A stretch of 64,000 bases of DNA, taken from IMG/VR virus record IMGVR_UViG_3300028393_000019, positions 124,001 through 188,000 of that record. One strand, 5' to 3'. The notes beneath the pieces were generated by a model, which was not told the DNA's origin, did no database searches, and was given only the letters and a program-made list of their open reading frames with translations. The translations under genes and the position numbers were made by a program. Below are positions 36,449 to 53,505 of this stretch, piece by piece; position 1 is the first letter of the stretch, and each line of letters starts with the position of its first letter.

Positions 36449-37684
36449 ATGAAAAAGATTCTACTTGCACTTATTGTTGTGATGCTGAGTGGATGTGCAG
36501 TGATCCAAAGCACAGGGTTGACTGAAGTAGATCCCACATTGACAACTCAACGTGTTAATATCAAAAAAGAATTTGATAATATGCCTGCGCCAGCTAACGG
36601 CAAACCTGTCAGTGTTGCAGTTTATGGATTTACAGATAAAACAGGACAACGTAGACCACAACCAAATGTGGCCAGTTTGAGTACAGCAGTTACACAAGGC
36701 GCTGAAACATTCTTGATACAGGCCTTGCAAGGTGTTGGACAAGGTCGCTGGTTTGAAGTAGTGGAACGTGTGGGTATTGATAACCTCACTAAAGAACGTA
36801 CCATCATTAGACAGATGCGCGAAGCATACGAAGGTGCCAATGCCAAACCTTTGATGCCTATGCAATTTGCAGGTATAATCATGGAGGGCGGTATTGTAGG
36901 ATATGATGCTACATCTACCAGCGGCGGCGCTGGCATGCGTATATTTGGTATTGGCAAACAAACACAGTGGTCAACAGACACAGTGACCATTAGTTTACGT
37001 GCTGTCAGTGTCAATACAGGTAAGGTGTTAGCTGTGGTTACTGTACAAAAAACTATTTTATCAACAGCAGATAGTGCAACAGCATTGAAGTTCTTTGATC
37101 AGGGCACACAGGCATTTGAAGCAGAGATGGGTCTAACAATCAACGAGCCAGGAACCTATGCAGTCAAGGCCGCAACAGAGATGGCTGTAGTTGAGTTGAT
37201 CAAAGAAGGAGCAAGAAAAGGCATATGGGAATACAAGCCGGACACTCCGGTAGTTTTACCAGCACCTGTAGTTGAAAAGAAAGCTCCAGTAATCAGTAGC
37301 GAGATTAAGAAAGAAGTAGAGGAGAAGAAAGATGTCGTGGTTCAACCGCAGGCCGTGCCCGAAACAAAAACAGAAACCATACCCAGTGCCCCCGCAGAAG
37401 TAAAGGTTGAAGAAAAGAAAGCTGAAGTAAAGAAAGACAATGTCAAACCCAACGAAACAAAAATAGCACAAGATACTGCTAGATCGTTATTTGGCAAACG
37501 TAAATTGAAAGAAGATTCTTATTTGTATTCGGAGCAGGATTATACAAGCGTTAAGAAGTGGCAGTTCAAGAAAGGCACAGTGGTAGATGTAAGACAGCCT
37601 GGAAGTGAAGGCTGGTTTAGAGTAACAGACAGTGAATCAAGGGGCGGATGGATTCGTACAGAGCAGTTAGAGGAAGTAAAATAA
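36449..37684 (+). CDS. csgG: curli secretion channel CsgG with a C-terminal SH3-like extension
   Basis: LSGC lipobox; AVYGFTDKTGQR, STAVTQGA, WFEVVER.G..NL.KER.IIR. Confidence 0.92.
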   Translation: MKKILLALIVVMLSGCAVIQSTGLTEVDPTLTTQRVNIKKEFDNMPAPANGKPVSVAVYGFTDKTGQRRPQPNVASLSTAVTQGAETFLIQALQGVGQGRWFEVVERVGIDNLTKERTIIRQMREAYEGANAKPLMPMQFAGIIMEGGIVGYDATSTSGGAGMRIFGIGKQTQWSTDTVTISLRAVSVNTGKVLAVVTVQKTILSTADSATALKFFDQGTQAFEAEMGLTINEPGTYAVKAATEMAVVELIKEGARKGIWEYKPDTPVVLPAPVVEKKAPVISSEIKKEVEEKKDVVVQPQAVPETKTETIPSAPAEVKVEEKKAEVKKDNVKPNETKIAQDTARSLFGKRKLKEDSYLYSEQDYTSVKKWQFKKGTVVDVRQPGSEGWFRVTDSESRGGWIRTEQLEEVK

Positions 37685-37906
37685 GGTGTTGTTTTTTTAA
37701 CAGTGTTGATTTTTTTACACCTTAGATGTAACGAAAAAATAACAGCAGTACTAAATTAAAGTCAACAATGTAGTAAATATTTTACAAAGGAAAAAGATGT
37801 AGCGAGAACAGTAGTACTAAAGGAACAGAGTTCCAAGGAGCGATGAGGGGATAAACTAAGCGTTTGTAAACAGTTACAAACAAGGTGTTCCAACCCAAAT
37901 CAAGTA

Positions 37907-38830
37907 ATGATGATGAAAACATCAAGTTTAAAAGGCGCTGGTAAGTTGTCGCGAAAATTACTTACAATTCTTATGGTGTCTGCAATGCCACCATTGGGCT
38001 ATGCTGTTGACAACAGTATCTACATCGATCAGACGGGGAGTAATGCTGTGATTAATATTACTCAGGATGGTGCAGGTAATACAGTTAAAGCATTGACAAG
38101 CAACAGAACAGATGCGGCTATAATTAATGCCGATGGTGCTAATATTGCAATAACACAAGTTGGATCGGGCAACACAGTATCGTTAGGAGTATCGGCATCA
38201 GTAACAAGTGGTATATCTACCGATATTACATATTCTACAGGTACCAGTGGAGTAACCGGATCAACAGCCATATTCAATGTTAATGCAGGTGGTACTCAAT
38301 CAAATGCAAGCAAGACCAGTATTAATGTGTTACAAACTGGCAACAGCTCTAAATTTGAAGCCGATGTCACAGGTACGGGCAATAGTATAAGTGCTACCAC
38401 AGCAGGACCAAGTGACGATGTGTATTCTAAAATGCGTGGAAGCAGTAACACAGCCAATGTCAGTTTTAGCGGTACCGGCGGCTCAAACCAAGCAGTACTT
38501 GATCAATCAGGTAGCGGCAGTAATGCCATTGGAATCAATGCAAGTAGTACAGGTAACTATTTTGGTGTAACACAAGTTGGTAGTTTGAATACTGTTACAG
38601 TTGGCGGATACACATCCGGTGCGTTAGCAGGCGATGACAACACTGTGTTAATTCAACAAAATGGTACAAGTAACTTGGCTAATTTAGGAATTACAGGTGC
38701 TAGTAATAGTGTTAATATTAACCAAGGCGGCACCGGCCAAGATGCTAATGTAAAAATTAGCGGCGCAAGTAACACTGTTAACATTAGTCAAGGCGCTGGC
38801 AGTAATTTGTTAACTCCGCTATCTCGTTAA
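37907..38830 (+). CDS. secreted curlin-repeat-like protein
   Basis: Signal peptide; repeated I.Q.G..N units. Confidence 0.75.
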   Translation: MMMKTSSLKGAGKLSRKLLTILMVSAMPPLGYAVDNSIYIDQTGSNAVINITQDGAGNTVKALTSNRTDAAIINADGANIAITQVGSGNTVSLGVSASVTSGISTDITYSTGTSGVTGSTAIFNVNAGGTQSNASKTSINVLQTGNSSKFEADVTGTGNSISATTAGPSDDVYSKMRGSSNTANVSFSGTGGSNQAVLDQSGSGSNAIGINASSTGNYFGVTQVGSLNTVTVGGYTSGALAGDDNTVLIQQNGTSNLANLGITGASNSVNINQGGTGQDANVKISGASNTVNISQGAGSNLLTPLSR

Positions 38831-38831
38831 C

Positions 38832-39956
38832 ATGGTTAAATTTTTAATAGGCGTTGTAGCTCTGTTAGCAATCTCACAGAGCTACGCGGCTATTGGCACC
38901 ATAACTGAACAAGTGAACGCGGCACCAACAGTAACACGCAAAACTCAAAATATAGTTGGAACCAAAGGCACTGGTATGGAGATGAACGATACTGTTCGCA
39001 CAACTCAGGGCAAGGTTGGGATAACATTCGAAGATCAGACCAAAGTACAAGTAAATGAAAACAGCAAACTAGTCATTGATGACTTTGTATACGATGCCAA
39101 GAAAGGCGCAGGTAAACTATCTCTTAATATGGCGTTGGGCACTGTGCGCTATGCATCAGGACAGATAGCCAAAAATAATCCGCAGAATGTGGGTATCACT
39201 ACACCAAGTGCCACTGTCAGTGTGCGTGGTACAGACTTTACTGCTACAGTAGATGAACTGGGTCGTAGTACATTTATTCTATTACCCAGCTGTCCCAGTG
39301 ATAGACTAACTCGTACTGTTAGCGATATTGAAACAAACTGCAAAGTTGGAGAGATTATTGTTGAAAGTGATGCTGGCCAAGTCGTATTAAATCAGGCGTT
39401 TCAAGCTACTAGAGTAGATAATAGAGGCACACCTCCTAGCCCGCCTGTCATATTAAAACTTAGCGAAGGTGCCATCAACAACATGATGATTGTTGCTCCT
39501 CCTAAAGAATTAAATCAAGATCAGCAAAAAACTAACACAAAATTTGAAATGAAAAATGCATTAGACATGAATTTTCTCAAAGAACAAGGGCTTGCTAATG
39601 TGTTGGATCAGCAACAGCAAGAAGTATACCAAGACAAACTAGCACGTAATTTCCTTGATCAGAACTTTCTTGCAAATATACTAGACATTATCGATAGTAT
39701 GATGAAGGCACAGATGAATTTATTAAATACTACAAGTAATAGATTACTTCCAGATTACAATGCTCTAACCGGGATTGTGGTAGACATACAAGAACCCAAG
39801 ATCACACTGAGCAGGGATGATGGCAGTAATGTGATGAGTGTAACTACTCCTACAAGTCAAAATACCACGATCTACATGACACAAGGTGCCATGGATACTA
39901 TTAAGAATAGAGTTAATAGCGGAGGCAGCACAGTTATAACGCTGATACAGAGATGA
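38832..39956 (+). CDS. FecR-domain periplasmic protein
   Basis: D.VRT...I.F.D.T...V.ENS and TPSATVSVRGTDF motifs. Confidence 0.85.
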   Translation: MVKFLIGVVALLAISQSYAAIGTITEQVNAAPTVTRKTQNIVGTKGTGMEMNDTVRTTQGKVGITFEDQTKVQVNENSKLVIDDFVYDAKKGAGKLSLNMALGTVRYASGQIAKNNPQNVGITTPSATVSVRGTDFTATVDELGRSTFILLPSCPSDRLTRTVSDIETNCKVGEIIVESDAGQVVLNQAFQATRVDNRGTPPSPPVILKLSEGAINNMMIVAPPKELNQDQQKTNTKFEMKNALDMNFLKEQGLANVLDQQQQEVYQDKLARNFLDQNFLANILDIIDSMMKAQMNLLNTTSNRLLPDYNALTGIVVDIQEPKITLSRDDGSNVMSVTTPTSQNTTIYMTQGAMDTIKNRVNSGGSTVITLIQR

Positions 39957-40120
39957 TAAGACAATCAAATTCCAGTTACGTTGAATCGCAAAGACGCAGA
40001 CAAAAAGAAAAAGAAGCGATAGCTCGTGATAACTTAATCAAAGGTATGATAATAGCTCCTATATATTTGTTAGCTTGGTTTCCTATAGTGTGGATAATAT
40101 CTAAGGTATTTGGCAAATGA
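39953..40120 (+). CDS. 55-aa membrane peptide (not in ORF track)
   Basis: MIRQSN...IIAPIYLLAWFPIVWIISKVFGK; ATGA overlaps at both ends. Confidence 0.55.
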   Translation: MIRQSNSSYVESQRRRQKEKEAIARDNLIKGMIIAPIYLLAWFPIVWIISKVFGK

Positions 40121-40704
40121 AATTCTTAATAGTTGCGATAGTCATATCTATGGCCGGTTTGCAATGTTCAAACACTAAGGCTGCCGATAATACTATTATC
40201 ATCGATCAAATAGGTAGCGGCAACACGACTACAATAGTTCAAGATGGCAGTGGCAATACTGCCAGTGTAACAGCTGGATCTACTAGTGCTGTTGATTATA
40301 ATGTGTTTGCCATAACACAACAGGGTAATAATAAGACTGCAAGTATAGAACTAAAATCAGGAATTAATAACACATTTAATATACAACAAGATGGCACAGG
40401 TAATCATAATGCTAGTATACAAAACATGATCGGATCGGGTAATAATGTTACAGTAACACAGCAAGGCGCAGGCAATCATACTCTTACAGTTACCAATCCA
40501 AACAATGCTACTAACAATGGCAATACTGTAACAGCAACACAAACGGGCGGAACAGGCGCCGACAAAACATTCAATTTATATTTTAATGGTGCTACAGGTG
40601 CCGGTGTTACTATCAATCAAACTAATCCTACACAACCGGATCAAGCAGGTATGAACATACAATGCAATCCGTGTGGGTCAGGATGGAGCTATACTAAGTT
40701 TTAA
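40117..40704 (+). CDS. secreted curlin-repeat-like protein
   Basis: Signal peptide; I.Q.G.GN repeats. Confidence 0.75.
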   Translation: MKFLIVAIVISMAGLQCSNTKAADNTIIIDQIGSGNTTTIVQDGSGNTASVTAGSTSAVDYNVFAITQQGNNKTASIELKSGINNTFNIQQDGTGNHNASIQNMIGSGNNVTVTQQGAGNHTLTVTNPNNATNNGNTVTATQTGGTGADKTFNLYFNGATGAGVTINQTNPTQPDQAGMNIQCNPCGSGWSYTKF

Positions 40705-40801
40705 GAGATAAATAAAGTACGGGCACAAAATAGGGTGTCGCTGGAACCCGTAATCAGCACTGGACCATTTTGGTCCTTTTTTACCCCTGAAGGAGTCTGG
40801 T

Positions 40802-40933
40802 ATGAAAGTTAAAAAATTAGTAATGAAACTTAACAAAGCCGAAGTTGAGCATAATTTAAAGAAAGTTAAAGAGTTTTGGTTTAAGTTGTTAAAGAAAAGT
40901 TTAAAACACAAGCACACAGAATCAGTAAGATAA
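40802..40933 (+). CDS. 43-aa Lys-rich peptide (not in ORF track)
   Basis: AAGGAG RBS; MKVKKLVMKLNKAEVEHNLKKVKEFWFKLLKKSLKHKHTESVR. Confidence 0.55.
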   Translation: MKVKKLVMKLNKAEVEHNLKKVKEFWFKLLKKSLKHKHTESVR

Positions 40934-40951
40934 TTGTAACATTCTTGTAAC
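40934..40951 (+). promoter_or_regulatory. Pho-box-like direct repeat
   Basis: TTGTAAC-ATTC-TTGTAAC with 11-bp periodicity, upstream of the plcP-like gene. Confidence 0.55.
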
Positions 40952-40982
40952 AACAGTAACTCAATACTGCGATAAATATGGT

Positions 40983-41753
40983 ATGACACCGAAAACTTAT
41001 CGCAGTATTTTTATTTCCGATGTACACTTAGGCACACGCGACTGCCAAGCTGGCAAACTCAACAACTTTCTCAAACACAACACCTGCGAAACATTGTATC
41101 TTGTAGGAGATATCATTGATGCGTGGAAAATCCAACAAAACAAATGGCGATGGAAACAGGCGCATACCAATGTCGTTCGTAGGGTTCTTGGTCACGCTAA
41201 ACGTGGCACTAGGGTTGTATACGTGGCTGGAAATCATGACGAATTCCTGCGCCCGATGATACCATATGGATTTAGCTTTGGACTTGTAGAAATACACAAT
41301 CAAACCGAACACATAGGCGCAGACGGCAAGCATTATCTTGTTACACACGGAGATTTGTTCGACGGAATTACCCGACTCGCGCCATGGCTGGCGTTTTTAG
41401 GTGATAAATTATACGATCTTGTGCTAGATTGGAACAGTAGATTCAACTGGGTTCGCCACAAATTAGGCTTCGGTTACTGGAGTTTGAGTAAATATCTAAA
41501 GCATAAAGTCAAGAAGGCATCGGACTTTATGTTTCAATTTGAACGTAATTTAGCGGGCTACTGTAAGAAACGTGGCTATGATGGCGTGATATGCGGACAT
41601 ATACATCACGCAGAAATCAAACAAATAGACGGTGTTACTTACATGAATGACGGTGACTGGGTAGAAAGTTGTACAGCATTAGTAGAACATCACGACGGCA
41701 CCTGGGAAATTGTTACATGGACACAAGAAAATGACCGTACTACTACTGACTAA
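40983..41753 (+). CDS. PlcP/LpxH-family metallophosphoesterase (phospholipase C-like)
   Basis: ISDVHLG, GDIID, GNHD, HGDLFD, CGHIH, NDGDWVES. Confidence 0.85.
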   Translation: MTPKTYRSIFISDVHLGTRDCQAGKLNNFLKHNTCETLYLVGDIIDAWKIQQNKWRWKQAHTNVVRRVLGHAKRGTRVVYVAGNHDEFLRPMIPYGFSFGLVEIHNQTEHIGADGKHYLVTHGDLFDGITRLAPWLAFLGDKLYDLVLDWNSRFNWVRHKLGFGYWSLSKYLKHKVKKASDFMFQFERNLAGYCKKRGYDGVICGHIHHAEIKQIDGVTYMNDGDWVESCTALVEHHDGTWEIVTWTQENDRTTTD

Positions 41754-42609
41754 ACAAAAGTCCGGATATGAGCGCAAGAGGCTAGAGCATAGCTTTGCTG
41801 AGAAGAAAATGGATGTGTTGATCAGCCATCCTAGCAAATTTGACATTGTACTCACTAGCGTAGTAAGTCAAAGTGTCAAACATTTGGGCAAAGATTTCCC
41901 CTGGCCCGAATTGGTCTTGACTCGTTCAGGCGCTGGTGAAAATAGTTTTAATCTTGCACTGCTCAGAGAATTTGAACAAGCTCTTGTTCCTGTGATCAAT
42001 ACAGCTGGCAGTATTGAAATAGCCCGCGACAAACTGCGCACCAATCAAATATTGGCAAACAACGGCCTACATGTTCCCAGAACAATGATGTTTAGATTTC
42101 CTGTAGACTACGATCTAGTTGAAAAGGAAATTGGATTTCCTTGTGTTGTCAAAGTAGTTACAGGGAGTCAAGGTAATGGAGTTTACCTGTGCGATACTAG
42201 AAAAGAATTTAAAAAATTAATGGGCATTGCAATTGGCCTCGGCAACAAAAAAACTTTGATTGTACAGGAATATCTAAACGAGAGAGTTGGGGAAGATTTA
42301 CGTGTACTTGTAGTAGGCGGCAAGGTAATAGGCGCCATGCGTCGCATCAGTAACAACGATTTTCGTGCCAACATTAGCCAAGGCGGATATGGTGAACCAT
42401 TTAAAGTTACTGAAGAGATAGATTTTCTCAGCAGAGAAAGTGCTAAGATATTGGGGTTAGATATTGCAGGAGTTGACTTGCTATTCAACAAAGGAAGTTT
42501 TAGTATATGCGAAGTTAATAGCAATCCCGGATTCAAAGGATTTGAAACTTATTGCAATGTAGATGTAGCAGATGCTATAACAGAATACGTAAAGTTTAGG
42601 ATTCAATGA
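41731..42609 (+). CDS. rimK: RimK-family ATP-grasp ligase
   Basis: RDKL, FPCVVK..GSQG.GV, QEYL, DFRANISQGG, EVNSNPG. Confidence 0.88.
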   Translation: MTVLLLTKQKSGYERKRLEHSFAEKKMDVLISHPSKFDIVLTSVVSQSVKHLGKDFPWPELVLTRSGAGENSFNLALLREFEQALVPVINTAGSIEIARDKLRTNQILANNGLHVPRTMMFRFPVDYDLVEKEIGFPCVVKVVTGSQGNGVYLCDTRKEFKKLMGIAIGLGNKKTLIVQEYLNERVGEDLRVLVVGGKVIGAMRRISNNDFRANISQGGYGEPFKVTEEIDFLSRESAKILGLDIAGVDLLFNKGSFSICEVNSNPGFKGFETYCNVDVADAITEYVKFRIQ

Positions 42610-43607
42610 CAAAAACTATTTTAATTATCACAGATAATCTAAAGGACCAGATCAATGGTGTTGTTACGACTTACAAAAATATTGAGACGTGTGCTGTTCG
42701 TGACGGTTATAACGTTGTGGTGTTGGATCCCGGGTGGTTCCGCTACATTGATTGTCCTGGCTACAACGAAGTCAAGATTGCCTATCCCCGGAACCTCGGC
42801 AAGAAGATTGAGGAGATATCTCCGGATTATATCCATATCGCCACAGAGGGTCCTTTGGGTTTGTGGGCTCGAGCATATCTTTCATTGGGTAATATTCGCC
42901 ACAATACCGCTTATCACACTAAGTTTCCTGAAGGGCTCCGAAAGCTATTTGGCGTACCTGAGTCACTTACCTGGAGATTTGTACGCTGGTTTCATAAGCA
43001 TAGTGGCAAAGTTTTAACAACTACAGACTCAATGGTTAAGGAATTAAAGGCACATGGATTTGATGGCGAAGTTATTCCATGGACTCGTGGGGTTGATCGT
43101 ACAATCTTTACTCCAGCACTTAGAGAAGAAGTTCTAGCAAAATATTTGCTGTGTGTTAGCCGTGTGAGTAAGGAAAAGAATTTAGAAAAGTTTTTTGAGC
43201 TAGACTATCCTGGCTATTTAAAAATAATGGTAGGCGATGGACCTATGCTAGAAACTTACAAGAAAAAATATCCCGATGTACATTTTACAGGATTTAAAAC
43301 AGGTGTAGATTTAGCTCGATACTATGCCAACGCTGAAGTGTTTGTATTTCCTAGTCAATGGGAAACATTTGGTATTGTAATGATAGAAGCAATGGCCTGC
43401 GGAACTCCCGTAGCCGCGTTTCCATGTCAAGGTCCGGAAGATGTTATTGATCAAGGCGTAACTGGATTTATGAATGAAAGTCTAGAGGATGCTGTTACAG
43501 GTTGTTTACAATTAAACAGAGGTTATGTTGAAATGGGTAGTCAACGTTGGACTTGGGAAAAGGCTTGGCAAATATTCCGTGACAACCTAGTGGAAAAATC
43601 CAGATAA
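42606..43607 (+). CDS. GT4 glycosyltransferase (Agt-like glycolipid synthase)
   Basis: ITD...QINGVVTT, HIATEGPLG, YHTKFPE, ETFGIVMIEAMACGTPV. Confidence 0.88.
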   Translation: MTKTILIITDNLKDQINGVVTTYKNIETCAVRDGYNVVVLDPGWFRYIDCPGYNEVKIAYPRNLGKKIEEISPDYIHIATEGPLGLWARAYLSLGNIRHNTAYHTKFPEGLRKLFGVPESLTWRFVRWFHKHSGKVLTTTDSMVKELKAHGFDGEVIPWTRGVDRTIFTPALREEVLAKYLLCVSRVSKEKNLEKFFELDYPGYLKIMVGDGPMLETYKKKYPDVHFTGFKTGVDLARYYANAEVFVFPSQWETFGIVMIEAMACGTPVAAFPCQGPEDVIDQGVTGFMNESLEDAVTGCLQLNRGYVEMGSQRWTWEKAWQIFRDNLVEKSR

Positions 43608-43614: not shown

Positions 43615-45657
43615 ATGTTAAAGAAACTCATCCTAAGCCCGTGGACTGCACTGCTGACTCTAGTGTTGGTAGTGGGCATACGCATTGCAGATCCCTCATT
43701 TGTTGAAAGCGTACGACTACGCTATTTTGATACATTAATTGTAAACAAAGAACCAACATTTAATAATATTATCACGGTCAACATAGACGAAGCTAGTCTA
43801 GACAAATACGGCCAATGGCCACTACCAAGGGTTAACTATGCTGAAATTATTGAAGACCTTTATCATCGTAATGCTGGCCTTGTTGTGCTTAACGTGCTCA
43901 TGGCTGAGCGTGATCGTACTGGTGGAGATAGGGATCTGGCCTCCACTCTTAAACATTATCCGGTAATACTTCCTAGCGTTCCCAGTAATCAAACAAAGAA
44001 TACACCACGTGTTCCAGGCAGTGCTGTACTAGCACCAGAATGGTTAGATCAAATTGTTCAGTATCCTGGACTTGTTGCCAACATCTCAAGTTTAGAAAAT
44101 AGTGCGGCCGGTGTTGGTATTGTAAACACGCTACCAGAGATAGATGGTGTCAATCGTCGTATGCCTTTGATTGTGTCAGTTGACGGCAAACTTTATCCAT
44201 CAATGAGTTTAGAAACTCTGCGTGTGGCCGCAGGTGACACAACATTCCAAGTTAAGTTGTTTGAAGGTGGCGTTGAGAAAATGCGTATCCCCAAGTTTGG
44301 GCCTGTGACTACAGATAATCTGGGGCGTGTTTGGATTGATTGGAGTCAACAAAATCGTAGTTTTAGTTTGATTAACTTACCCAAAGATTTAGAAGGTGCT
44401 GTTGTTATAGTAGGACCTACAGCCGCAGGTATCGGTAATCCGTTACCAACTAGCAAAGGCGCAATATGGCCTCATGATGTACAAGCCGCTGTTATTGGCA
44501 CAATGATGAATGGAGTTGTTATACAACGGCCTGATTGGGCAGACGGTGCAGAAATATTGGGCTTATTGACCGCAGGTATTTTATTATTATTTTTAACAAG
44601 GTGGACTTATGTTGGTATTGGCGCAGGTGTTGTTATTATTGGCTCTATTATTCCTCTATGTGGACTCGCATATAGCAGTGGCTTACAACTCGTGGATGCG
44701 ACTGTTCCGGTCGGGGGCCTTGTTTTGGTTATGCTTCACGCTTATGGTGTTAAGTTTGTAAGTGAATACTTACAGAAACAAGCAATCAAGAAACAGTTTG
44801 CTGGCTATTGCAGTAAGGAAGTAGTCGAACTACTACAAAAAGATCCAGACTTGATCAAGCGTGGTGTACGTAAAGACGTAAGTGTCATGTTCAGTGATCT
44901 ACGTGGCTTTACTCCTATTGGTGAACATTACGGAGATGATGTTGCTGGCTTGGGCAAGTATATGAACGGATACATGGACAGCATTAGTCGTCCCATGCTA
45001 GATAATAATGGAATGATTATCAAGTACGTAGGCGATGCAAGTATGCACATACACGGTGCCCCTATTGAAGATCCTAATCACGCTAGAACAATAGTTGCTG
45101 TTGGACTTGAAATGCTAGACAAAGTAGACGAGTATACTAACATTATGGAAGCACAAGGATTGCCACCAGCCGCAATGGGTTGGGGTTGTAACTCAGGTAT
45201 TGGCTTTATCGGTGAGATGGGTTCAACAGAACGACACAGCTATGACATCTTGGGTGACATGGTTTCAACTGCGGCACGACTAGAAGCACGTTGTAAAGCA
45301 TATGGTGTATTGTGTATTATTGGTGCTGAAACATACAACCGTACTAAGGATGATTTCTTCTACTTGTATTTGGATAACTTACAACCAAAAGGTAAAACTG
45401 TAGCAGATGCTATCTATACAGCATTACGAACCAAAGGCAACGACTACAGTAAAGAACTTGCCACACACAATAAGATGCATATCCTGTACAAAGAAAAACA
45501 ATTTGATGCGGCTGCTATATTGTGTGGAGAATTGAAAGGCAAGTTTAGCGGACAAATGGACAAGTACTACAAAATGTGGATTGAACGCTGTGCGTTTATG
45601 AAACAGCAAGATCTAGGCGATGATTGGAACGGTGAGTTTATTGCTCACGAGAAATAA
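43615..45657 (+). CDS. CHASE2-domain class III adenylate/guanylate cyclase
   Basis: IDEASL..YGQWP CHASE2 domain, three TMs, FSDLRGFT, KYVGDA, AARLE. Confidence 0.92.
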   Translation: MLKKLILSPWTALLTLVLVVGIRIADPSFVESVRLRYFDTLIVNKEPTFNNIITVNIDEASLDKYGQWPLPRVNYAEIIEDLYHRNAGLVVLNVLMAERDRTGGDRDLASTLKHYPVILPSVPSNQTKNTPRVPGSAVLAPEWLDQIVQYPGLVANISSLENSAAGVGIVNTLPEIDGVNRRMPLIVSVDGKLYPSMSLETLRVAAGDTTFQVKLFEGGVEKMRIPKFGPVTTDNLGRVWIDWSQQNRSFSLINLPKDLEGAVVIVGPTAAGIGNPLPTSKGAIWPHDVQAAVIGTMMNGVVIQRPDWADGAEILGLLTAGILLLFLTRWTYVGIGAGVVIIGSIIPLCGLAYSSGLQLVDATVPVGGLVLVMLHAYGVKFVSEYLQKQAIKKQFAGYCSKEVVELLQKDPDLIKRGVRKDVSVMFSDLRGFTPIGEHYGDDVAGLGKYMNGYMDSISRPMLDNNGMIIKYVGDASMHIHGAPIEDPNHARTIVAVGLEMLDKVDEYTNIMEAQGLPPAAMGWGCNSGIGFIGEMGSTERHSYDILGDMVSTAARLEARCKAYGVLCIIGAETYNRTKDDFFYLYLDNLQPKGKTVADAIYTALRTKGNDYSKELATHNKMHILYKEKQFDAAAILCGELKGKFSGQMDKYYKMWIERCAFMKQQDLGDDWNGEFIAHEK

Positions 45658-46351
45658 GTTTTGCAAGTCCTAATAAACTAAAAAGTCTCAGCCACATATA
45701 ACCAATATCAAATTCAAACCAGCGGCGACTCAGTTTAACGCTTGCTGGATTAAGATGATGGTTATTATGAAGTTCTTCACCGCCCACCACAATGCCCCAA
45801 GGAACAATGTTGCGACTACTATCACGAGTAGTTCCGTTCTTGTAACCATACCAATGTCCTATACCGTTGATAACTCCAGCGGCCCAAAATGGAATCCATA
45901 TCATTTGCACACCCCACACTACAAATCCCCACGGTCCAAAGAACAATAGATCTATGATCAGCATTAGAAGAATACCGAGGCGGCTATGGGGTGTATAAAT
46001 GTTACGCTCAATCCAATCGTCAGGAGTACCTACTCCAAACTTGTTGACCATGTCTGTGTCTTTACTTGCTAGATGATAAAGGCCTGCACCTTTGAAAAAT
46101 ACACGAGCGATGCCGTATACGTGCGGGCTATGCGGATCACCCGCATTATCACTAAATGCATGATGCTTACGATGTATAGCCACCCATTGTTTGGTTACCA
46201 TACCAGTTGTAAGCCATAGCCATGCTCGCATGAAATGGCTTAGTATCGGGTTGAATGCGATTCCCTTGTGCGCTTGGCCTCTGTGTAAAAACAAAGTAAC
46301 GGAAACGATAGTGATGTGTGTGACTACAAGTGTGTATATAATTATGTTCAT
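45638..46351 (-). CDS. delta-9-type fatty acid desaturase
   Basis: His boxes HRGQAH, HRKHH, HNNHH. Confidence 0.92.
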   Translation of the reverse strand: MNIIIYTLVVTHITIVSVTLFLHRGQAHKGIAFNPILSHFMRAWLWLTTGMVTKQWVAIHRKHHAFSDNAGDPHSPHVYGIARVFFKGAGLYHLASKDTDMVNKFGVGTPDDWIERNIYTPHSRLGILLMLIIDLLFFGPWGFVVWGVQMIWIPFWAAGVINGIGHWYGYKNGTTRDSSRNIVPWGIVVGGEELHNNHHLNPASVKLSRRWFEFDIGYMWLRLFSLLGLAKLISREQ

Positions 46352-48420: not shown

Positions 48421-48488
48421 CACAAGGTCGCGTAAAATCAGTCAAAGCTAGAGCCAAACGTGCAACTCGTAAAGCACGTAACAAGTAA
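48417..48488 (+). CDS. 23-aa highly basic peptide
   Basis: AGGAG RBS, ATGA overlap; MTQGRVKSVKARAKRATRKARNK. Confidence 0.6.
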   Translation: MTQGRVKSVKARAKRATRKARNK

Positions 48489-48494
48489 TAGCAA

Positions 48495-48841
48495 AAGAAT
48501 TGTTGTACAAGCCTTAAAGTAAGGCATTCTGGACGCGGGTTCGACTCCCGCCAGGTCCACCATAAGCATATTAGGTCGTTGAGTTAAAAAGTCGCATGTG
48601 ATGCGCTCAGACTAAAATAGTATGCTTTTGATGGGCCTGCCATGGTTTCGACAGGGTGAGATAGGATAAAGGTCAACACGTGGGGTCACGTAAAATACAA
48701 ATAAAGTAAATGCAAAAGCAAATACATTCGAGTATTTCCAAGTTCCTGTAACATTAGCTACTGCTAATGATGCAGAATTTGCAATCGCAGCCTAAGAAAC
48801 TGCACTCGCGAGGTAGGACTTACCTTGTCATCAAAACAACC
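48495..48841 (+). ncRNA. ssrA: two-piece (circularly permuted) tmRNA
   Basis: Acceptor piece ends GCGGGTTCGACTCCCGC-CAGGTCC-ACCA (48562); coding piece starts GGGCCTG (48633) giving G3:U70; tag frame ends ANDAEFAIAA-stop (48795); outer ends approximate. Confidence 0.9.
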
Positions 48842-48868
48842 AAAAAGGCACTTTCGAGTGCCTTTTTT
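48842..48868 (+). terminator. intrinsic terminator after tmRNA
   Basis: AAAAAGGCACT-TTCG-AGTGCCTTTTTT. Confidence 0.88.
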
Positions 48869-48869
48869 A

Positions 48870-50320: not shown

Positions 50321-50409
50321 GGAAGTGTGCGCTGAATTGGTTGAAGGCAACGGACTGTAAATCCGCCACATAAGAAACATTGTTGGTTCGAATCCAACCA
50401 CTTCCACCA
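50321..50409 (+). tRNA. tRNA-Tyr(GTA)
   Basis: Cloverleaf, long variable arm, encoded CCA. Confidence 0.92.
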
Positions 50410-50414
50410 AATTT

Positions 50415-50489
50415 GGTCCTGTCATATAGTGGTTATTATACCGGCCTGTCTAGTCGGATATCGGGGTTCGATTCCCCGCAGGATCGCCA
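50415..50489 (+). tRNA. tRNA-Asp(GTC)
   Basis: CCGGC-CTGTCTA-GTCGG arm, CCA. Confidence 0.92.
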
Positions 50490-50497
50490 AGTATATT

Positions 50498-50574
50498 CGG
50501 AGTGTAGCGCAGTCTGGTAGCGCACCTGGTTTGGGACCAGGGGGTCCAAGGTTCGAATCCTTGTACTCCGACCA
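50498..50574 (+). tRNA. tRNA-Pro(TGG)
   Basis: CCTGG-TTTGGGA-CCAGG arm, CCA. Confidence 0.95.
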
Positions 50575-50581
50575 ATTTTAT

Positions 50582-50656
50582 GCACGGTTCGTCTATCGGT
50601 TAGGACACTGGCCTTTCACGTCAGTAAGACGGGTTCGATTCCCGTACCGTGTACCA
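50582..50656 (+). tRNA. tRNA-Glu(TTC)
   Basis: CTGGC-CTTTCAC-GTCAG arm, CCA. Confidence 0.93.
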
Positions 50657-50659
50657 AGA

Positions 50660-50841
50660 ACGTTCCGCTTTGTTAGCGGATACTGTGACCCGCAGGATGG
50701 GAAGTGAGGTGACTCTCAAGGGTGGTTCTAGTCTTACCGAACTAGCGTTAGCAACACGATAGCGGTCCCTGTCGGGAAGCGGGTGGAGGGCATGCGTGAT
50801 GGACCTAGTCCTGATGTGCTATAATTACCGCCGAGGGATGT
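50660..50841 (+). ncRNA. candidate structured RNA
   Basis: GC-rich; closing ACGTTCC/GGGATGT; ACCCGC 50688/GCGGGT 50779; several hairpins. Confidence 0.55.
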
Positions 50842-50851
50842 CAGAGCTTTT

Positions 50852-50925
50852 CCTCTTGTAGTTAAATGGTATAACAGTCGGCTGATAACCGGCCATTACA
50901 AGTTCGATTCTTGTCGAGAGGACCA
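50852..50925 (+). tRNA. tRNA-Ile(GAT)
   Basis: GTCGG-CTGATAA-CCGGC arm, CCA. Confidence 0.92.
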
Positions 50926-50953
50926 ATTTTTAACAAAGAACAAAGGAAATGTT

Positions 50954-51331
50954 ATGTCATATAGTGACTGGAATAACTCTGCTAAAATAGCAGACATGGT
51001 AGGTAAAACTTTTACAAGTGTAAAAGCAGATGGCAACGAGTTGGTGTTTGAAAACAGCGTGGATCGTTATGTGTTCTTTCATGCACAAGATTGTTGCGAA
51101 CATGTGCGCATTGAAGACATCGCGGGCGACTTGAGCGACCTAGAAGGTGAACCTTTAGTAATAGCAGACGAAGTTGAAGGTGAAAGCCCAGCTGACTTTG
51201 AAGCATACGAAAGTTACACTTGGACATTTTACAAGTTCGCTACTCGCAAGGGCTATGTGGACGTGAGATGGCTAGGAGAAAGCAACGGGTACTACAGCGA
51301 AAGCGTAAACCTAGGATACGAAACAGTTTAA
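50954..51331 (+). CDS. acidic hypothetical phage protein
   Basis: AAGGA RBS; HAQDCCE ... WTFYK ... SNGYYSE. Confidence 0.8.
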   Translation: MSYSDWNNSAKIADMVGKTFTSVKADGNELVFENSVDRYVFFHAQDCCEHVRIEDIAGDLSDLEGEPLVIADEVEGESPADFEAYESYTWTFYKFATRKGYVDVRWLGESNGYYSESVNLGYETV

Positions 51332-51381
51332 TTTTATAAAAGGAGATCTGTCATGACCAGTGACAAGAGTGATAAGATGAT

Positions 51382-51456
51382 GGGGGTATAACTTAACGGC
51401 TAAAGTAGCGGGCTTTTAACCCGTAAATCAGAGTTCGATTCTCTGTGCCCCTACCA
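51382..51456 (+). tRNA. tRNA-Lys(TTT)
   Basis: GCGGG-CTTTTAA-CCCGT arm, CCA. Confidence 0.92.
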
Positions 51457-51553
51457 TATAAAAACATACTGGATCTTCTAGTGGACTAAGACGCTGGCAA
51501 ATAGGTCGGTGAACGTGGTGTTCAAATCCCACTCTAGTGTGTTTCTATATGGT
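51453..51553 (+). ncRNA. tRNA-like element on a ~20-bp closing stem, lacking CCA
   Basis: D-like arm TCTT..AGTGG..AAGA, T-like arm GTGG-TGTTCAAATC-CCAC, non-canonical anticodon loop. Confidence 0.55.
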
Positions 51554-51631
51554 ATTACTTGTAGATAAATCGAGATTGTTTTTTAATCTCTTTAATCTTT
51601 TTCCTATACTTGAAACGGATGTATAAAGATT

Positions 51632-52435
51632 TTAAAAATGCAAACATTTAATCTTCTCAGCTAGATCTTTGGCTATTAGATCGTGTCCGGATTGCGTAAA
51701 ATGCCATTGGGGCAAGTAGTCAGCATTTGTTATTTCTTCCAAAGATTTAGCAGTTAGTTTAAAGTCATAAAACTCTTTTAACAACTGCTGTTGGATATCA
51801 TTTAACAAGATTGGATCTTTTTCATTCACTATTAGATCGACCTCTTGCCCTTTTAGGTGCGGTTCTTCCAAAGGTTGATTTAACTTAGTAGGCGAGATAC
51901 GTAACAGATAACAGGGTATATTTTTAGAACGAAGTAGTCTTACAGCATATAGCACAGACACATAGTCTTCAACCATCGTAAGCGATTCGTTAAAAAATTC
52001 AAGAAAGAATTCTTGCATGATATTGTTTTGTCTACTATTTAAAAAATGAGTCGGCCAGTTTGGTTGTAGAACTGCACTGTTTACTAGGTTATTTGAATAA
52101 TTCACTAGTAGTCGATTATGAGTAGTCATTTGAATCACTGCTACAGTATCATCGTAGTGGTTTTCAGGAAATTTTAAAATAGCTCGCATAGCTATTTCTT
52201 TATTGGAAATACCTCGTAGGGCAATATTTTCAATCTCTGCATTGAGTAGATTGCCTACCAATGATGGGTAACAATATTGTTTATTATATTCGTTTATTTG
52301 TTCATCGGATGCAGACCTAGTAGCTTTACCAGCTTGAAACACATTCATAGCGGTGTATTGGGGGACGAATTTTTCTTCCCATAGCTCTGTACCAGCGGTA
52401 ATACTGCATCCTGCGAAAACGATTTTTTTAATCAT
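51632..52435 (-). CDS. SGNH-hydrolase-like hypothetical protein inserted antisense in the tRNA array
   Basis: GCSITAG, NIALRGISN, HFTQSGH. Confidence 0.7.
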   Translation of the reverse strand: MIKKIVFAGCSITAGTELWEEKFVPQYTAMNVFQAGKATRSASDEQINEYNKQYCYPSLVGNLLNAEIENIALRGISNKEIAMRAILKFPENHYDDTVAVIQMTTHNRLLVNYSNNLVNSAVLQPNWPTHFLNSRQNNIMQEFFLEFFNESLTMVEDYVSVLYAVRLLRSKNIPCYLLRISPTKLNQPLEEPHLKGQEVDLIVNEKDPILLNDIQQQLLKEFYDFKLTAKSLEEITNADYLPQWHFTQSGHDLIAKDLAEKIKCLHF

Positions 52436-52462
52436 AGTAAAATATTTATTATAATTTTTTAC

Positions 52463-52538
52463 AGTAGAGTAGCATAGCGGCTAATGCACCACCTTCATAC
52501 GGTGTTTATCGTGGGTTCGAGTCCCACCTCTACTACCA
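52463..52538 (+). tRNA. tRNA-Met(CAT) (elongator Met, or Ile2 if lysidine-modified)
   Basis: CACC-TTCATAC-GGTG arm, paired 1-72, CCA. Confidence 0.88.
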
Positions 52539-52542
52539 AATT

Positions 52543-52618
52543 GGAAGTTTAGCTCAGCTGGTAGAGCGTCTGCCTTACACGCAGAATGTCGGCGGTTCGA
52601 TCCCGTCAACTTCCACCA
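52543..52618 (+). tRNA. tRNA-Val(TAC)
   Basis: TCTGC-CTTACAC-GCAGA arm, CCA. Confidence 0.95.
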
Positions 52619-52624
52619 AACTGT

Positions 52625-52698
52625 TGGGGGTTAGTTAAATGGTATAACCGCGGATTTTGATTCCGCTATTAAAGGTTCGATTCCTTTACCCTCTGCCA
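52625..52698 (+). tRNA. tRNA-Gln(TTG)
   Basis: GCGGA-TTTTGAT-TCCGC arm, CCA. Confidence 0.92.
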
Positions 52699-52704
52699 AT
52701 CAAT

Positions 52705-52780
52705 GGTGTCTTTAGTGTAGTGGCCTGCACCCTGCTCTGTGAAAGCGGTAGTACCGGATCGATACCGGTAAGGCACCCCA
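52705..52780 (+). tRNA. tRNA-His(GTG)
   Basis: G-1/C73; CTGCT-CTGTGAA-AGCGG arm, CCA. Confidence 0.92.
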
Positions 52781-52785
52781 AACAT

Positions 52786-52861
52786 GCTACTTTAGCTGAT
52801 GTGGTCATAGCGGCGGTCTGAAGAACCGTTGAACCAGGTTCGATTCCTGGAGGTAGCACCA
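52786..52861 (+). tRNA. tRNA-Phe(GAA)
   Basis: GCGGT-CTGAAGA-ACCGT arm, CCA. Confidence 0.93.
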
Positions 52862-52864
52862 AGT

Positions 52865-53064: not shown

Positions 53065-53126
53065 TTCAACAGACCCCCGCTTTGTCAGGTTGTGCGGTAA
53101 ACAATCTGACACTTACTAAGTAATTG

Positions 53127-53368: not shown

Positions 53369-53375
53369 TCTTTAT

Positions 53376-53451: not shown

Positions 53452-53505
53452 AATTATGGCTCCTAGACTTGTTCACATAGTGTCCCCTGGGAGTTTTTCT
53501 TTTAT

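What the first reader, a model, noticed from the sequence alone, without database searches (positions are those of the whole stretch)
40934..43607. Phage-encoded PlcP/Agt-like phospholipid-replacement module under a Pho-box-like repeat
Seen: TTGTAAC-N4-TTGTAAC lies about 30 nt upstream of a metallophosphoesterase, followed by rimK and a GT4 glycosyltransferase. Established: PlcP plus Agt replace phospholipids with glycolipids under PhoB control in phosphate-starved heterotrophic bacteria, and Pho boxes are 11-bp direct repeats. Inference: the phage frees phosphate from host membranes for DNA synthesis, with input from both PhoB and a late promoter (TAAATA 40973).
Basis: partly seen in the sequence, partly recalled or inferred. 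Interest (0 to 1): 0.6.

Follow-up and report, generated by a model that had tools for sequence, protein, structure and literature searches.

The report
Phage PlcP–Agt lipid-renovation operon with Pho box
A large freshwater phage carries its own copies of the two bacterial enzymes that swap phosphorus-containing membrane lipids for sugar lipids, behind a phosphate-starvation switch that related phages also place before their phosphate-uptake gene, so the phage probably taps its host's membrane for phosphorus.

Summary
TTGTAAC-ATTC-TTGTAAC lies at 40934-40951, 31 nt before a 256-aa metallophosphoesterase (40983-41753), followed by a rimK-family gene and a GT4 gene that overlap end to start.

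The repeat alone is not above chance. Comparison with relatives makes it significant. At least 595 viral contigs carry this phosphoesterase at 85% identity or more. Where it has its own upstream region, a YTGTMAY-N4-YTGTMAY box sits exactly 10, 20 or 21 nt before an NTAAATA promoter motif. The same box, 10 nt before TTAAATA, precedes phage pstS in relatives.

The phosphoesterase groups with proteobacterial PlcP-like paralogues (50-58% identity), not LpxH (17-22%). Those paralogues lie before a GT4 gene and behind Pho boxes. The phage GT4's best hit in five of five bacterial genomes is that plcP-adjacent gene (Agt-type). It carries a WE-for-TD change in the donor motif. rimK fills a variable slot and is not a conserved part.

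ATAAATA is a true phage promoter motif, also found before terminase and sheath genes.

PhoB binding, enzyme activities and the phosphorus-scavenging purpose remain inferred. I found no paper describing a phage-encoded PlcP-Agt module.

The parts
40762..40786 (+). Intrinsic-terminator-like hairpin plus T-run that closes the upstream curli-like gene cluster and insulates the plcP unit
   Evidence: stem 40762-40776, then TTTTTT. Relatives show equivalent hairpins directly before their Pho boxes (L044, L076, L077, L092, L095).
40802..40933 (+). Small lysine-rich ORF (43 aa) of unknown role that ends one base before the Pho box
   Evidence: No Pfam hit. Relatives L051 and L069 carry upstream DNA that closely resembles the 3' end of this ORF (by eye). 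It is uncertain whether this ORF belongs to the module.
40934..40951 (+). Pho-box-like direct repeat: two TTGTAAC half-sites separated by 4 nt (11-nt period)
   Evidence: It matches the published consensus CTGTCATNNNNCTGTCAT (PMC8528852) at 10 of 14 positions. Relatives carry TTGTCAC/TTGTCAT versions.
40963..40968 (+). AATACT, a possible sigma-70 -10 hexamer 11 nt after the Pho box (inferred)
   Evidence: By eye. Relatives of the 20-nt spacing class keep (A/G)ATACT or ATGCT at the same place. The consensus scan finds no -35/-10 promoter here, as expected if the Pho box replaces the -35 element.
40971..40978 (+). GATAAATA, the phage promoter motif (resembles the T4-type late promoter TATAAATA); it ends 4 nt before the ATG, so the mRNA would have little or no leader
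   Evidence: 30 of the 49 ATAAATA copies in the genome lie at -40 to -7 of ORF starts, where 0.8 is expected; the motif precedes the terminase, sheath and virion-protein genes.
40983..41753 (+). plcP-like gene: calcineurin-type metallophosphoesterase, 256 aa, predicted phospholipase C that yields diacylglycerol
41731..42609 (+). RimK-family ATP-grasp ligase. The likely start is ATG 41731 (the ORF list gives TTG 41710). It overlaps the plcP end by 23 nt and the GT4 start by 4 nt. It is a lineage-specific insert in a variable slot.
   Evidence: TIGR00768 scores 222 bits against a cut-off of 143; the S6-ligase equivalog scores 152 against 331. Searches show the slot is variable.
42606..43607 (+). 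agt-like GT4 glycosyltransferase, 333 aa, predicted diacylglycerol glycosyltransferase; it is a variant with SRVSKEKN and FPSQWETFG motifs
   Evidence: motifs from PMC8231724.
43603..43610 (+). Second GATAAATA motif, overlapping the GT4 stop codon, 4 nt before the CHASE2-cyclase gene; it marks the downstream edge of the module

Best explanation
This is a phage-borne plcP-agt membrane-lipid renovation operon. In this lineage a rimK-family gene is inserted between the two genes.

**Shown by sequence**
- The genes are a PlcP-family metallophosphoesterase and an Agt-type GT4.
- They overlap end to start.
- They sit behind an upstream terminator and a compound promoter made of a Pho-box-like repeat and the phage's own ATAAATA promoter motif.

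**Inferred mechanism**
- In a phosphate-starved proteobacterial host, phosphorylated PhoB binds the two half-sites and drives transcription.
- The ATAAATA motif adds expression in the phage's own (probably late) programme.
- PlcP cleaves phospholipids to diacylglycerol plus a phosphorylated head group.
- Agt transfers a sugar from a UDP-sugar to the diacylglycerol.
- The membrane therefore stays intact while lipid phosphorus becomes available for making phage DNA. The genome is at least 265 kb.
For: **Family**
- The LpxH models score far below cut-off.
- Five bacterial genomes hold both a true LpxH (270-333 bits) and the PlcP-like paralogue (27-56 bits).
- In the tree LpxH separates with 100/100 support, and the phage clade lies among the PlcP-like rows.
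- Identity is 50-58% to the proteobacterial homologues. Validated PlcPs are only 46-47% identical to one another (PMC8528852).
- All metal-binding motif residues are invariant.
- The closest solved fold is LpxH, a lipid-binding phosphoesterase with a helical cap.

**Partner gene**
- About 60 of 80 bacterial homologues are followed directly by a GT4 that is 34-44% identical to the phage GT4.
- That gene is the best hit for the phage GT4 in 5 of 5 genomes: 240-252 bits, against 106 or less for the next hit.
- The GT4 directly follows the phosphoesterase in about half of 86 phage loci.

**Regulation**
- The box is conserved and sits at a fixed 10, 20 or 21 nt from NTAAATA.
- The same box, 10 nt before TTAAATA, precedes true pstS genes in relatives.
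- The strict box occurs 18 times in 844 kb, where about 0.6 is expected.
- Bacterial plcP and pstS promoters carry TGTCAT/TGTAAC-type boxes.
- In pelagiphage Mosig the homologue is transcribed divergently from pstS.

**Published support**
- PlcP-Agt is Pho-regulated in bacteria (PMC4796936, PMC8528852).
- Host PhoB controls phage genes (PMC10976474).
Against: - No enzyme activity and no PhoB binding was tested.
- A published study found that predicted phage Pho boxes were unreliable without EMSA (PMC10976474).
- In this window the box lies 20 nt, not the canonical 10 nt, from the ATAAATA motif. The intermediate AATACT hexamer is only a guess.
- The phage GT4 has Trp-Glu where the characterised Agt clade has Thr-Asp in the donor/catalytic motif. 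Its sugar donor, and even its acceptor, could therefore differ.
- In about 40% of relatives the phosphoesterase occurs without a nearby GT4. In many it follows another ORF with no box.
- The host is unknown.
- Contigs from RNA libraries cover the genes, but DNA carry-over is not excluded.
Confidence: 0.65

Rival explanations
1. The enzymes are PlcP and Agt, but their purpose is not phosphorus scavenging. The phage may remodel the envelope for another reason: to block superinfection, to change surface or receptor properties, to stabilise the membrane of a cell carrying a very large phage load, or to time lysis.
For: - The neighbourhood is envelope-themed: a CsgG and curlin-repeat cluster directly upstream, and a fatty-acid desaturase and a CHASE2 cyclase downstream.
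- Desaturase genes also lie near plcP in relatives.
- Published work shows that lipid renovation changes membrane proteins, phage receptors and grazing susceptibility (PMC9804370, PMC9457565).
Against: - The shared box and promoter geometry with pstS, and the physical adjacency of pstS and plcP in several relatives and in Mosig, tie the module to the phosphate response.
- The two purposes do not exclude each other.
Confidence: 0.17
2. The direct repeat is not a PhoB site. It may bind a phage-encoded regulator or a different host regulator, or it may be an upstream element of the phage promoter. Expression would then follow only the phage's temporal programme.
For: - The box always accompanies the phage NTAAATA motif at a fixed helical phase. 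That is also what an upstream element of a phage promoter would show.
- TTGTAAC differs from CTGTCAT at 2 of 7 positions per half-site.
- Predicted phage Pho boxes have failed binding tests before (PMC10976474).
Against: - Among about 30 ATAAATA promoters in this genome, only this one carries the box.
- In relatives the box is confined to pstS, plcP and one unknown 214-aa ORF.
- Some relatives carry canonical TTGTCAC/TTGTCAT half-sites.
- Bacterial pstS promoters carry TGTAAC half-sites.
- No OmpR-type DNA-binding domain was found in the 265-kb record, although the record is only about 72% complete.
Confidence: 0.13
3. The phosphoesterase is an LpxH-like enzyme acting on lipid A precursors, as public annotation states, and the GT4 modifies LPS or another surface glycan.
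For: - Public sources name the close homologues 'UDP-2,3-diacylglucosamine pyrophosphatase LpxH'.
- LpxH is the closest solved fold.
Against: - The LpxH equivalog models score 45 and 35 bits against cut-offs of 134 and 190.
- The tree split has 100/100 support, and identity to LpxH is 17-22%.
- Genomes that hold the bacterial homologues keep a separate true LpxH.
- The GT4's best hits are the plcP-adjacent genes, not LPS transferases.
Confidence: 0.04

Closest known systems
Bacterial PlcP-Agt lipid renovation operon (P. aeruginosa PA3219-PA3218; SAR11 HTCC7211 PB7211_983 and PB7211_960; Phaeobacter MED193_17359; S. meliloti PlcP; A. tumefaciens Agt atu2297)
   Same: - The gene order is the same, with the phosphoesterase directly before the GT4.
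- The protein families match: 50-58% and 34-44% identity to proteobacterial operon members.
- A Pho box lies upstream.
- The predicted chemistry is the same: phospholipid to diacylglycerol to glycolipid.
(PMC4796936, PMC8528852, PMC8231724.)
   Different: - The module is carried by a phage, at least 265 kb in size.
- Its promoter combines the Pho box with a phage ATAAATA motif and leaves almost no leader.
- The Agt motif is FPSxWETFG instead of FPSxTDTFG.
- A rimK-family gene is inserted between the two genes in this lineage.
- I did not compare the phage proteins directly with the experimentally characterised proteins, because no tool supplied their sequences.
Phage phosphate-stress genes under host PhoBR control (cyanophage P-SSM2 pstS/phoA; S-PM2d genes)
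   Same: A host-type Pho box on a phage gene would make its expression respond to the host's phosphate status. pstS genes in relatives carry the same box (PMC10976474).
   Different: - The cargo is a lipid-renovation pathway, not an uptake protein or a phosphatase.
- The box is of the proteobacterial CTGTCAT type, not the cyanobacterial PyTTAAPyPy(T/A) type.
Pelagibacter phage Mosig EXVC030M gene Mosig_00120, annotated 'putative UDP-2,3-diacylglucosamine hydrolase'
   Same: - It is 50.6% identical over 93% of the query.
- It lies divergent from a phage phosphate-binding-protein gene.
- The shared intergenic region holds TTAAC-type direct repeats and an ATAAATA motif just before the ATG.
   Different: - No adjacent GT4.
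- It is a marine T4-like phage of 141 kb.
- Its isolation host, HTCC1062, lacks plcP (PMC4796936).
LpxH (UDP-2,3-diacylglucosamine diphosphatase)
   Same: It shares the calcineurin-like core with a helical cap inserted after the third metal motif. All of the top 25 ranks in the PDB fold search are LpxH structures, with TM-scores of about 0.56-0.59.
   Different: Identity is 17-22%, the equivalog cut-offs are not reached, and it forms a separate clade.

Membership tests
PlcP (metallophosphoesterase-type phospholipase C of lipid renovation) | Calcineurin-like phosphoesterase core with the metal-binding motifs intact | tested here: met
   Pfam Metallophos and Metallophos_2 score above cut-off. 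D13, H15, D43, N84, H85, H122, H206 and H208 are invariant in 27 phage and bacterial sequences.
PlcP (metallophosphoesterase-type phospholipase C of lipid renovation) | Belongs to the PlcP paralogue group, separate from LpxH | tested here: met
   In the tree LpxH splits off with 100/100 support and the phage rows lie among the PlcP-like rows. Bacterial genomes hold both paralogues. Two wrongly extracted LpxH rows (L181, L182) were left out.
PlcP (metallophosphoesterase-type phospholipase C of lipid renovation) | Direct similarity to an experimentally characterised PlcP (PA3219, MED193_17359, PB7211_983, S. meliloti PlcP) | not tested
   No tool supplied those sequences. As a proxy, identity is 54-57% to Pseudomonas spp. 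genes that have the PA3219-like context of a Pho box upstream and an agt1-like gene downstream.
PlcP (metallophosphoesterase-type phospholipase C of lipid renovation) | Lies next to a gene for non-phosphorus lipid synthesis and behind a Pho box | tested here: met
   The GT4 lies downstream in the window and in about half of the relatives. The box is conserved.
PlcP (metallophosphoesterase-type phospholipase C of lipid renovation) | Phospholipase C activity that releases diacylglycerol | not testable with these tools
   This needs an enzyme assay or complementation.
Agt / GTcp clade of GT4 (diacylglycerol glycosyltransferase) | GT4 GT-B domains, length about 334 aa, and best match genome-wide to the plcP-adjacent GT4 | tested here: met
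   Pfam Glyco_transf_4 and Glycos_transf_1 are both present and the protein is 333 aa. It is the best hit in 5 of 5 genomes, at 240-252 bits against 106 or less for the next hit.
Agt / GTcp clade of GT4 (diacylglycerol glycosyltransferase) | UDP-sugar motif GRVAXEKN | tested here: met
   The window has SRVSKEKN. The R, V, E, K and N positions are kept, with G to S and A to S changes (motif from PMC8231724).
Agt / GTcp clade of GT4 (diacylglycerol glycosyltransferase) | Motif FPSXTDTFG with Asp as the catalytic partner of His | tested here: not met
   The window has FPSQWETFG. Of 39 phage GT4s with the motif, 36 have WE, whereas all of the plcP-adjacent bacterial GT4s in which the motif was detected (56 of 57) have (T/A)D. 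I therefore file it as an Agt-related variant, not a plain member.
Agt / GTcp clade of GT4 (diacylglycerol glycosyltransferase) | Makes glucosyl- or glucuronosyl-diacylglycerol | not testable with these tools
   This needs expression and lipidomics.
LpxH | Reaches the NCBIfam equivalog cut-off | tested here: not met
   NF003743 scores 45 bits against 134. TIGR01854 scores 35 against 190.
RimK (ribosomal protein S6 glutamate ligase) | RimK-family ATP-grasp domain, and reaches the S6-ligase equivalog cut-off | tested here: inconclusive
   The family model TIGR00768 scores 222 bits against a cut-off of 143, so that part is met. The S6-ligase equivalog NF007764 scores 152 against 331, so that part is not met. 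It is a RimK-family ligase whose substrate is unknown.
Pho box (PhoB binding site) | Two 7-nt direct repeats with a 4-nt spacer that resemble CTGTCAT | tested here: met
   The window has TTGTAAC twice, matching 5 of 7 positions in each half-site. Relatives carry TTGTCAC/TTGTCAT.
Pho box (PhoB binding site) | Sits one helical turn upstream of the -10 element, in place of a -35 element | tested here: inconclusive
   The spacing is 10 nt in 10 relatives and before all 4 phage pstS genes, but 20 nt in this window. A candidate -10 hexamer, AATACT, lies 11 nt after the box. No -35/-10 promoter was found.
Pho box (PhoB binding site) | Bound by phosphorylated PhoB; induced by low phosphate | not testable with these tools
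   This needs EMSA, footprinting or a reporter assay.
T4-type late promoter | A TATAAATA-like motif placed just before genes, including the structural genes | tested here: met
   The window has GATAAATA. Thirty of the 49 copies in the genome lie at -40 to -7 of ORF starts. The motif precedes the terminase, sheath and virion-protein genes, but not the UvsW or DnaK genes.
T4-type late promoter | The phage encodes a gp55-like late sigma factor | tested here: inconclusive
   tblastn with Mosig gp55 finds nothing, while the terminase, sheath and UvsW genes are found. The record is about 72% complete and BLAST is not very sensitive.

The most novel reading that the evidence does not exclude
Host PhoB may act directly on the phage's own late-type ATAAATA promoter. 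The fixed 10, 20 or 21 nt phasing would reflect a host response regulator co-activating a phage-specific polymerase form. The result would be nearly leaderless plcP mRNA, and late-gene output would be tuned to the host's phosphate status. On this reading the module also gives lipid renovation to hosts that lack it. Pelagiphage Mosig on HTCC1062 points that way, because that host has no plcP.
Probability: 0.15. Interest if true: 0.8.

Novelty: new member of a known kind. Interest (0 to 1): 0.62.

Why it matters
**A new kind of phage phosphate-stress cargo.** The phage phosphate-stress genes described so far act on uptake or on soluble phosphorus (pstS, phoA, phoH, mazG). A phage-encoded PlcP-Agt pair would add the host membrane as a phosphorus source that a virus can draw on.

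**Quantitatively plausible.** From general knowledge, an E. coli-sized cell holds roughly 2x10^7 phospholipid molecules. A genome of about 370 kb (my estimate from 265,680 bp at 72% completeness) needs about 7x10^5 phosphorus atoms. This estimate is an inference, not a tool result.

**Common, not a curiosity.** At least 595 viral contigs carry the gene. Their source metagenomes were not looked up; the runs that hold this window's stretch are freshwater and lake-water metagenomes. Homologues also occur in a cultured pelagiphage and a cultured freshwater cyanophage. Public annotation names them all LpxH.

**Consequences if true.** Environmental counts of plcP, and lipid-based readings of phosphorus stress, may partly reflect viral genes and infected cells.

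**Directly testable.** The conserved box and promoter pair makes the regulation open to test in laboratory strains.

Tried and rejected
**Similarity searches**
- Megablast of the region against deposited phages found nothing. Only protein-level hits exist.

**Other sites of the motif**
- A second degenerate box in the genome (G000 263757-263774, minus strand) is the start of a plus-strand ORF read backwards. It is not a site.
- My first impression of a third in-phase GTAAC was wrong: its offset is 9 nt.

**Searches of the phage's own genome**
- The 265-kb record holds no pstS, no OmpR-type DNA-binding domain, no Gp23-type capsid protein and no AmoC. The record is incomplete, and two of these searches rang in no control genome.
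- tblastn with Mosig gp55, gp23 and gp20 was negative.

**Tree**
- Two LpxH rows (L181, L182) were extracted in a wrong frame. They distorted the first tree and were left out of the final tree.

**Host identity was not settled**
- A search with phage PstS over 401 genomes of one class gave a best hit of 75% identity in an unnamed, 65%-GC genome.
- The phage's permuted tmRNA matches the betaproteobacterial family. Phage tmRNAs are known not to track the host (PMC9004378).

**Expression**
- Contigs from two lake metatranscriptome libraries match parts of all three genes exactly. They also cover upstream intergenic DNA, so transcription is not shown, and no start site could be read.

**Literature**
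- Searches for a phage-encoded PlcP or LpxH-like lipid module found none. The library searched does not hold most subscription journals.
Full report
**Where the window lies.** The window is bases 124001-188000 of a 265,680-bp linear viral record, estimated 72% complete, with 42% G+C. It is a large phage.
- It has distant T4-like terminase, sheath and UvsW genes.
- It carries a DnaK gene and ribonucleotide reductase.
- It holds 28 tRNA genes and a permuted tmRNA.

**The observation.**
- TTGTAAC-ATTC-TTGTAAC lies at 40934-40951.
- GATAAATA lies at 40971-40978.
- A 256-aa calcineurin-type phosphoesterase is encoded at 40983-41753.
- A RimK-family ATP-grasp ORF ends at 42609. Its likely start is ATG 41731, which overlaps the phosphoesterase end by 23 nt.
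- A 333-aa GT4 glycosyltransferase is encoded at 42606-43607, overlapping rimK by 4 nt.
- A terminator-like hairpin at 40762-40786 precedes the unit. No sigma-70 -35/-10 pair lies before the gene.

Taken alone, the repeat is not significant.
- The window has ten other-or-equal 7-mer direct repeats at an 11-nt offset, against about 4.5 in shuffles.
- Near matches to the pattern are at chance level.
- The exact pattern is unique in the genome.

**Relatives.** The phosphoesterase has thousands of close relatives at 83-95% identity in metagenomes. At least 595 viral contigs carry it. Contigs reach 324-513 kb and have phage-like gene content. The N-terminus is conserved, so the ATG at 40983 is the true start. 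In 86 related loci the phosphoesterase stays at 85-100% identity, while the GT4, where present directly downstream (about half of the loci), varies from 52 to 89% in the full-length matches from other phages.

The slot between the two genes is variable.
- It is usually empty.
- In one relative (L045) it holds a rimK only 45% identical to this one.
- In another (L019) it holds an unrelated 274-aa ORF.
- None of 80 bacterial loci has a rimK there.

rimK is therefore a passenger in this lineage, not a conserved part of the module.

**The box is conserved and phased.** Wherever the phosphoesterase gene has its own upstream region, a (C/T)TGT(A/C)A(C/T)-N4-(C/T)TGT(A/C)A(C/T) repeat is present. Some relatives carry the canonical TTGTCAC/TTGTCAT form.
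- Of 67 distinct upstream regions, 26 match at 12 or more of 14 positions and 19 match at 13 or more.
- Random 90-nt windows from the same loci reach those levels in 1.8% and 0.26% of cases.
- In all 26, the box is followed by NTAAAT(A) after exactly 10 nt (10 cases), 20 nt (12 cases, this window among them) or 21 nt (4 cases). That is one or two helical turns.
- The other upstream regions are coding. There the gene simply follows another ORF.

**The same box precedes pstS.** The strict pattern occurs 18 times in 844 kb of related loci. About 0.6 would be expected from the shuffle rate.
- Ten copies lie before the phosphoesterase gene.
- Three lie before 334-335-aa proteins.
- Three lie before an unknown 214-215-aa ORF.
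- The rest lie on the opposite strand near the same promoters.

The 334-335-aa proteins are true PstS. Two of them were scanned and score 391-425 bits on the NCBIfam equivalog NF008171, whose cut-off is 339. All four phage pstS promoters show the box, then 10 nt, then TTAAATA, then a 25-30-nt leader with an AAGGAG ribosome site. In several relatives pstS and the phosphoesterase gene are adjacent, each with its own box.

In the cultured pelagiphage Mosig the homologue (50.6% identity) is transcribed divergently from a phosphate-binding-protein gene. The shared intergenic region has TTAAC-type direct repeats and an ATAAATA just before the ATG. This independent link to pstS is the main reason to read the repeat as a Pho box.

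**Which family the phosphoesterase belongs to.** The LpxH equivalog models score 45 and 35 bits, against cut-offs of 134 and 190. The closest cellular homologues are 49-58% identical and come from Alpha-, Beta- and Gammaproteobacteria.
- About 60 of the 80 are followed directly by a GT4 that is 34-44% identical to the phage GT4.
- Many have Pho-box-like repeats upstream, for example three phased half-sites in a Pseudomonas and four in a Mesorhizobium.
- Five of these genomes also hold a separate, true LpxH scoring 270-333 bits, while the paralogue in question scores 27-56.
- In a maximum-likelihood tree of 37 rows, LpxH splits off with 100/100 support and the 13 freshwater-phage rows form one group (84/92) among the PlcP-like rows. 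Identity to LpxH is 17-22%. Two mis-extracted LpxH rows were left out of this tree.

This gene pair and its Pho box match what the literature describes as plcP-agt in P. aeruginosa (PA3219-PA3218), SAR11 HTCC7211 and Phaeobacter. Validated PlcPs are themselves only 46-47% identical to one another (PMC8528852, PMC4796936).

All metal-binding residues are invariant. A predicted structure (mean pLDDT 80.8) has the phosphoesterase core with a helical insertion at residues 123-197. All of the top 25 ranks among solved structures are LpxH, a lipid-binding enzyme with a cap of that kind, at TM-scores of about 0.56-0.59. No PlcP structure exists in the PDB copy searched.

**The GT4.** In five bacterial genomes its best hit is always the gene next to plcP (240-252 bits). 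The next hit scores 106 or less. In Pseudomonas that second hit may be the Agt2 homologue, but I did not check this. The characterised clade (GTcp/Agt) is defined by the motifs GRVAXEKN and FPSXTDTFG, with Asp in place of the usual GT4 Glu (PMC8231724).
- The phage protein has SRVSKEKN and FPSQWETFG.
- Of 39 phage GT4s with the motif, 36 have WE.
- All of the plcP-adjacent bacterial GT4s in which the motif was detected (56 of 57) have (T/A)D.

I therefore call it an Agt-related variant. Its sugar donor cannot be predicted.

**The promoter motif.** ATAAATA occurs 49 times in the genome on both strands. Thirty copies lie at -40 to -7 of ORF starts, where 0.8 is expected. They fall into two position classes: starting 11-14 nt, or 25-34 nt, before the ATG.
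- The motif precedes the terminase, sheath and a virion-protein gene.
- It does not precede the UvsW or DnaK genes.

It is thus a real phage promoter element that resembles the T4-type late promoter. No gp55 homologue was detected, so 'late' rests on the kinds of genes that carry the motif.

In this window the motif ends 4 nt before the ATG and there is no ribosome-binding site. The mRNA would therefore be nearly leaderless, which is an inference. In the 20-nt spacing class a conserved (A/G)ATACT lies 11 nt after the box. This allows a reading of two tandem promoters: a PhoB-dependent one and the phage one. In the 10-nt class the NTAAATA itself sits where a Pho-dependent -10 element would be. 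Which polymerase form uses which element is unknown.

**Mechanism.**
- Shown: the identity of the genes, their coupling, and the conserved compound promoter shared with pstS.
- Inferred: PhoB binding, phospholipid cleavage to diacylglycerol, glycosylation of the diacylglycerol, and use of the released phosphorus for phage DNA.

The host is unknown.
- The box type, the AAGGAG ribosome sites and the closest homologues point to Pseudomonadota.
- The permuted tmRNA matches the betaproteobacterial family at 118.5 bits against a cut-off of 84. Phage tmRNAs need not reflect the host (PMC9004378).

Contigs from two lake metatranscriptome libraries match parts of all three genes exactly. They cover intergenic DNA too, so transcription is not demonstrated.

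**Known or new.** Both ingredients are known. One is the bacterial PlcP-Agt pathway under PhoB. The other is phage genes under host PhoB control (PMC10976474). I found no paper that describes a phage-encoded PlcP or PlcP-Agt pair. Deposited phage genomes label the gene as LpxH. The published note that HTCC1062, the host on which Mosig was isolated, lacks plcP (PMC4796936) suggests that phages can bring this function to hosts without it. I rate the finding a new member of a known kind. It has two variant features: the compound promoter and the WE motif.

Noticed in passing
window 36449-40704: A curli-like cluster lies directly upstream of the module. It comprises a CsgG-domain protein (36449-37684; PF03783, 160.7 bits), two curlin-repeat proteins (37907-38830 and 40117-40704) and a FecR-domain protein (38832-39956). 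Published pelagimyophages and the Melnitz phage have only the CsgG/CsgF pore and no fibre subunits (PMC9004378). Here, fibre-like repeat proteins are present. Relative L019 also has a 683-aa curlin-repeat protein before its plcP.
   Followed up: partly
window 43615-45657: A 680-aa protein with a CHASE2 sensor domain and an adenylate/guanylate cyclase domain follows the GT4 directly and has its own GATAAATA motif. It matches phrog_35576 strongly (7e-188), so deposited phages have it too. A phage-encoded membrane sensor-cyclase next to lipid genes remains unexplained.
   Followed up: no
window 45638-46351 (- strand): A short DesA-family fatty-acid desaturase of 237 aa. It covers model positions 9-239 of 385 and scores 399.3 bits against a cut-off of 400. 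It converges on the cyclase gene and overlaps its end. Relatives L004 and L005 carry a 236-aa desaturase about 3 kb from plcP, so the short form is consistent. A protein this short may lack the last histidine box.
   Followed up: partly
window 48450-48869 and 50321-57130: A permuted (two-piece) tmRNA gene matches Rfam beta_tmRNA (118.5 bits) and tmRNA_permuted (118.9 bits). Its predicted tag peptide ends in ANDAEFAIAA. It is followed by a block of 28 tRNA genes.
   Followed up: partly
whole genome G000; for example window 40971, 43603; G000 61548 (terminase): Fourteen ATAAATA motifs start 11-14 nt before an ATG, with no ribosome-binding site between them. The plcP and terminase genes belong to this class. 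If transcription starts about 6 nt after the motif, as at T4 late promoters, these genes would give leaderless mRNAs.
   Followed up: partly
window 40736-40786: The sequence GTGTCGCTGGAACCCGTAATCAGCAC, just before the terminator hairpin, occurs once in this genome. It recurs in relatives L071, L077 and L093 upstream of their Pho boxes. No Rfam family matched it. It could be the 3' end of a conserved small RNA or a processing site.
   Followed up: partly
L075:4880-5524, L077:5195-5842: In relatives, an unknown 214-215-aa ORF directly before plcP is preceded by the same Pho box. L077 has two overlapping boxes. It has no Pfam or NCBIfam family. It is a candidate further member of the phage phosphate-response set.
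   Followed up: partly
L051:2016-2033, L083:5758-5775: In two relatives a Pho-box pattern lies in the opposite orientation about 200 nt upstream of plcP. In L051 an AGGAG ribosome-binding site and an ATG follow it directly on the plus strand. That ATG may start the counterpart of window ORF 40802-40933, but I did not check this.
   Followed up: no
window 30358-32271 and 18894-22312: The phage encodes a DnaK (Hsp70) that is 64-70% identical to proteobacterial DnaK sequences found in deposited records. It also encodes a class I ribonucleotide reductase large subunit. The adjacent ORF (21212-22312) was not scanned.
   Followed up: no
L025, L028, L046 upstream of the phosphoesterase gene: In some relatives plcP has no promoter of its own. 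It follows an ORF whose C-terminus reads ...CGCGSSFSV, which resembles the IscA/HesB iron-sulfur assembly family. In others it follows different ORFs. The gene has been placed in several operon contexts.
   Followed up: no
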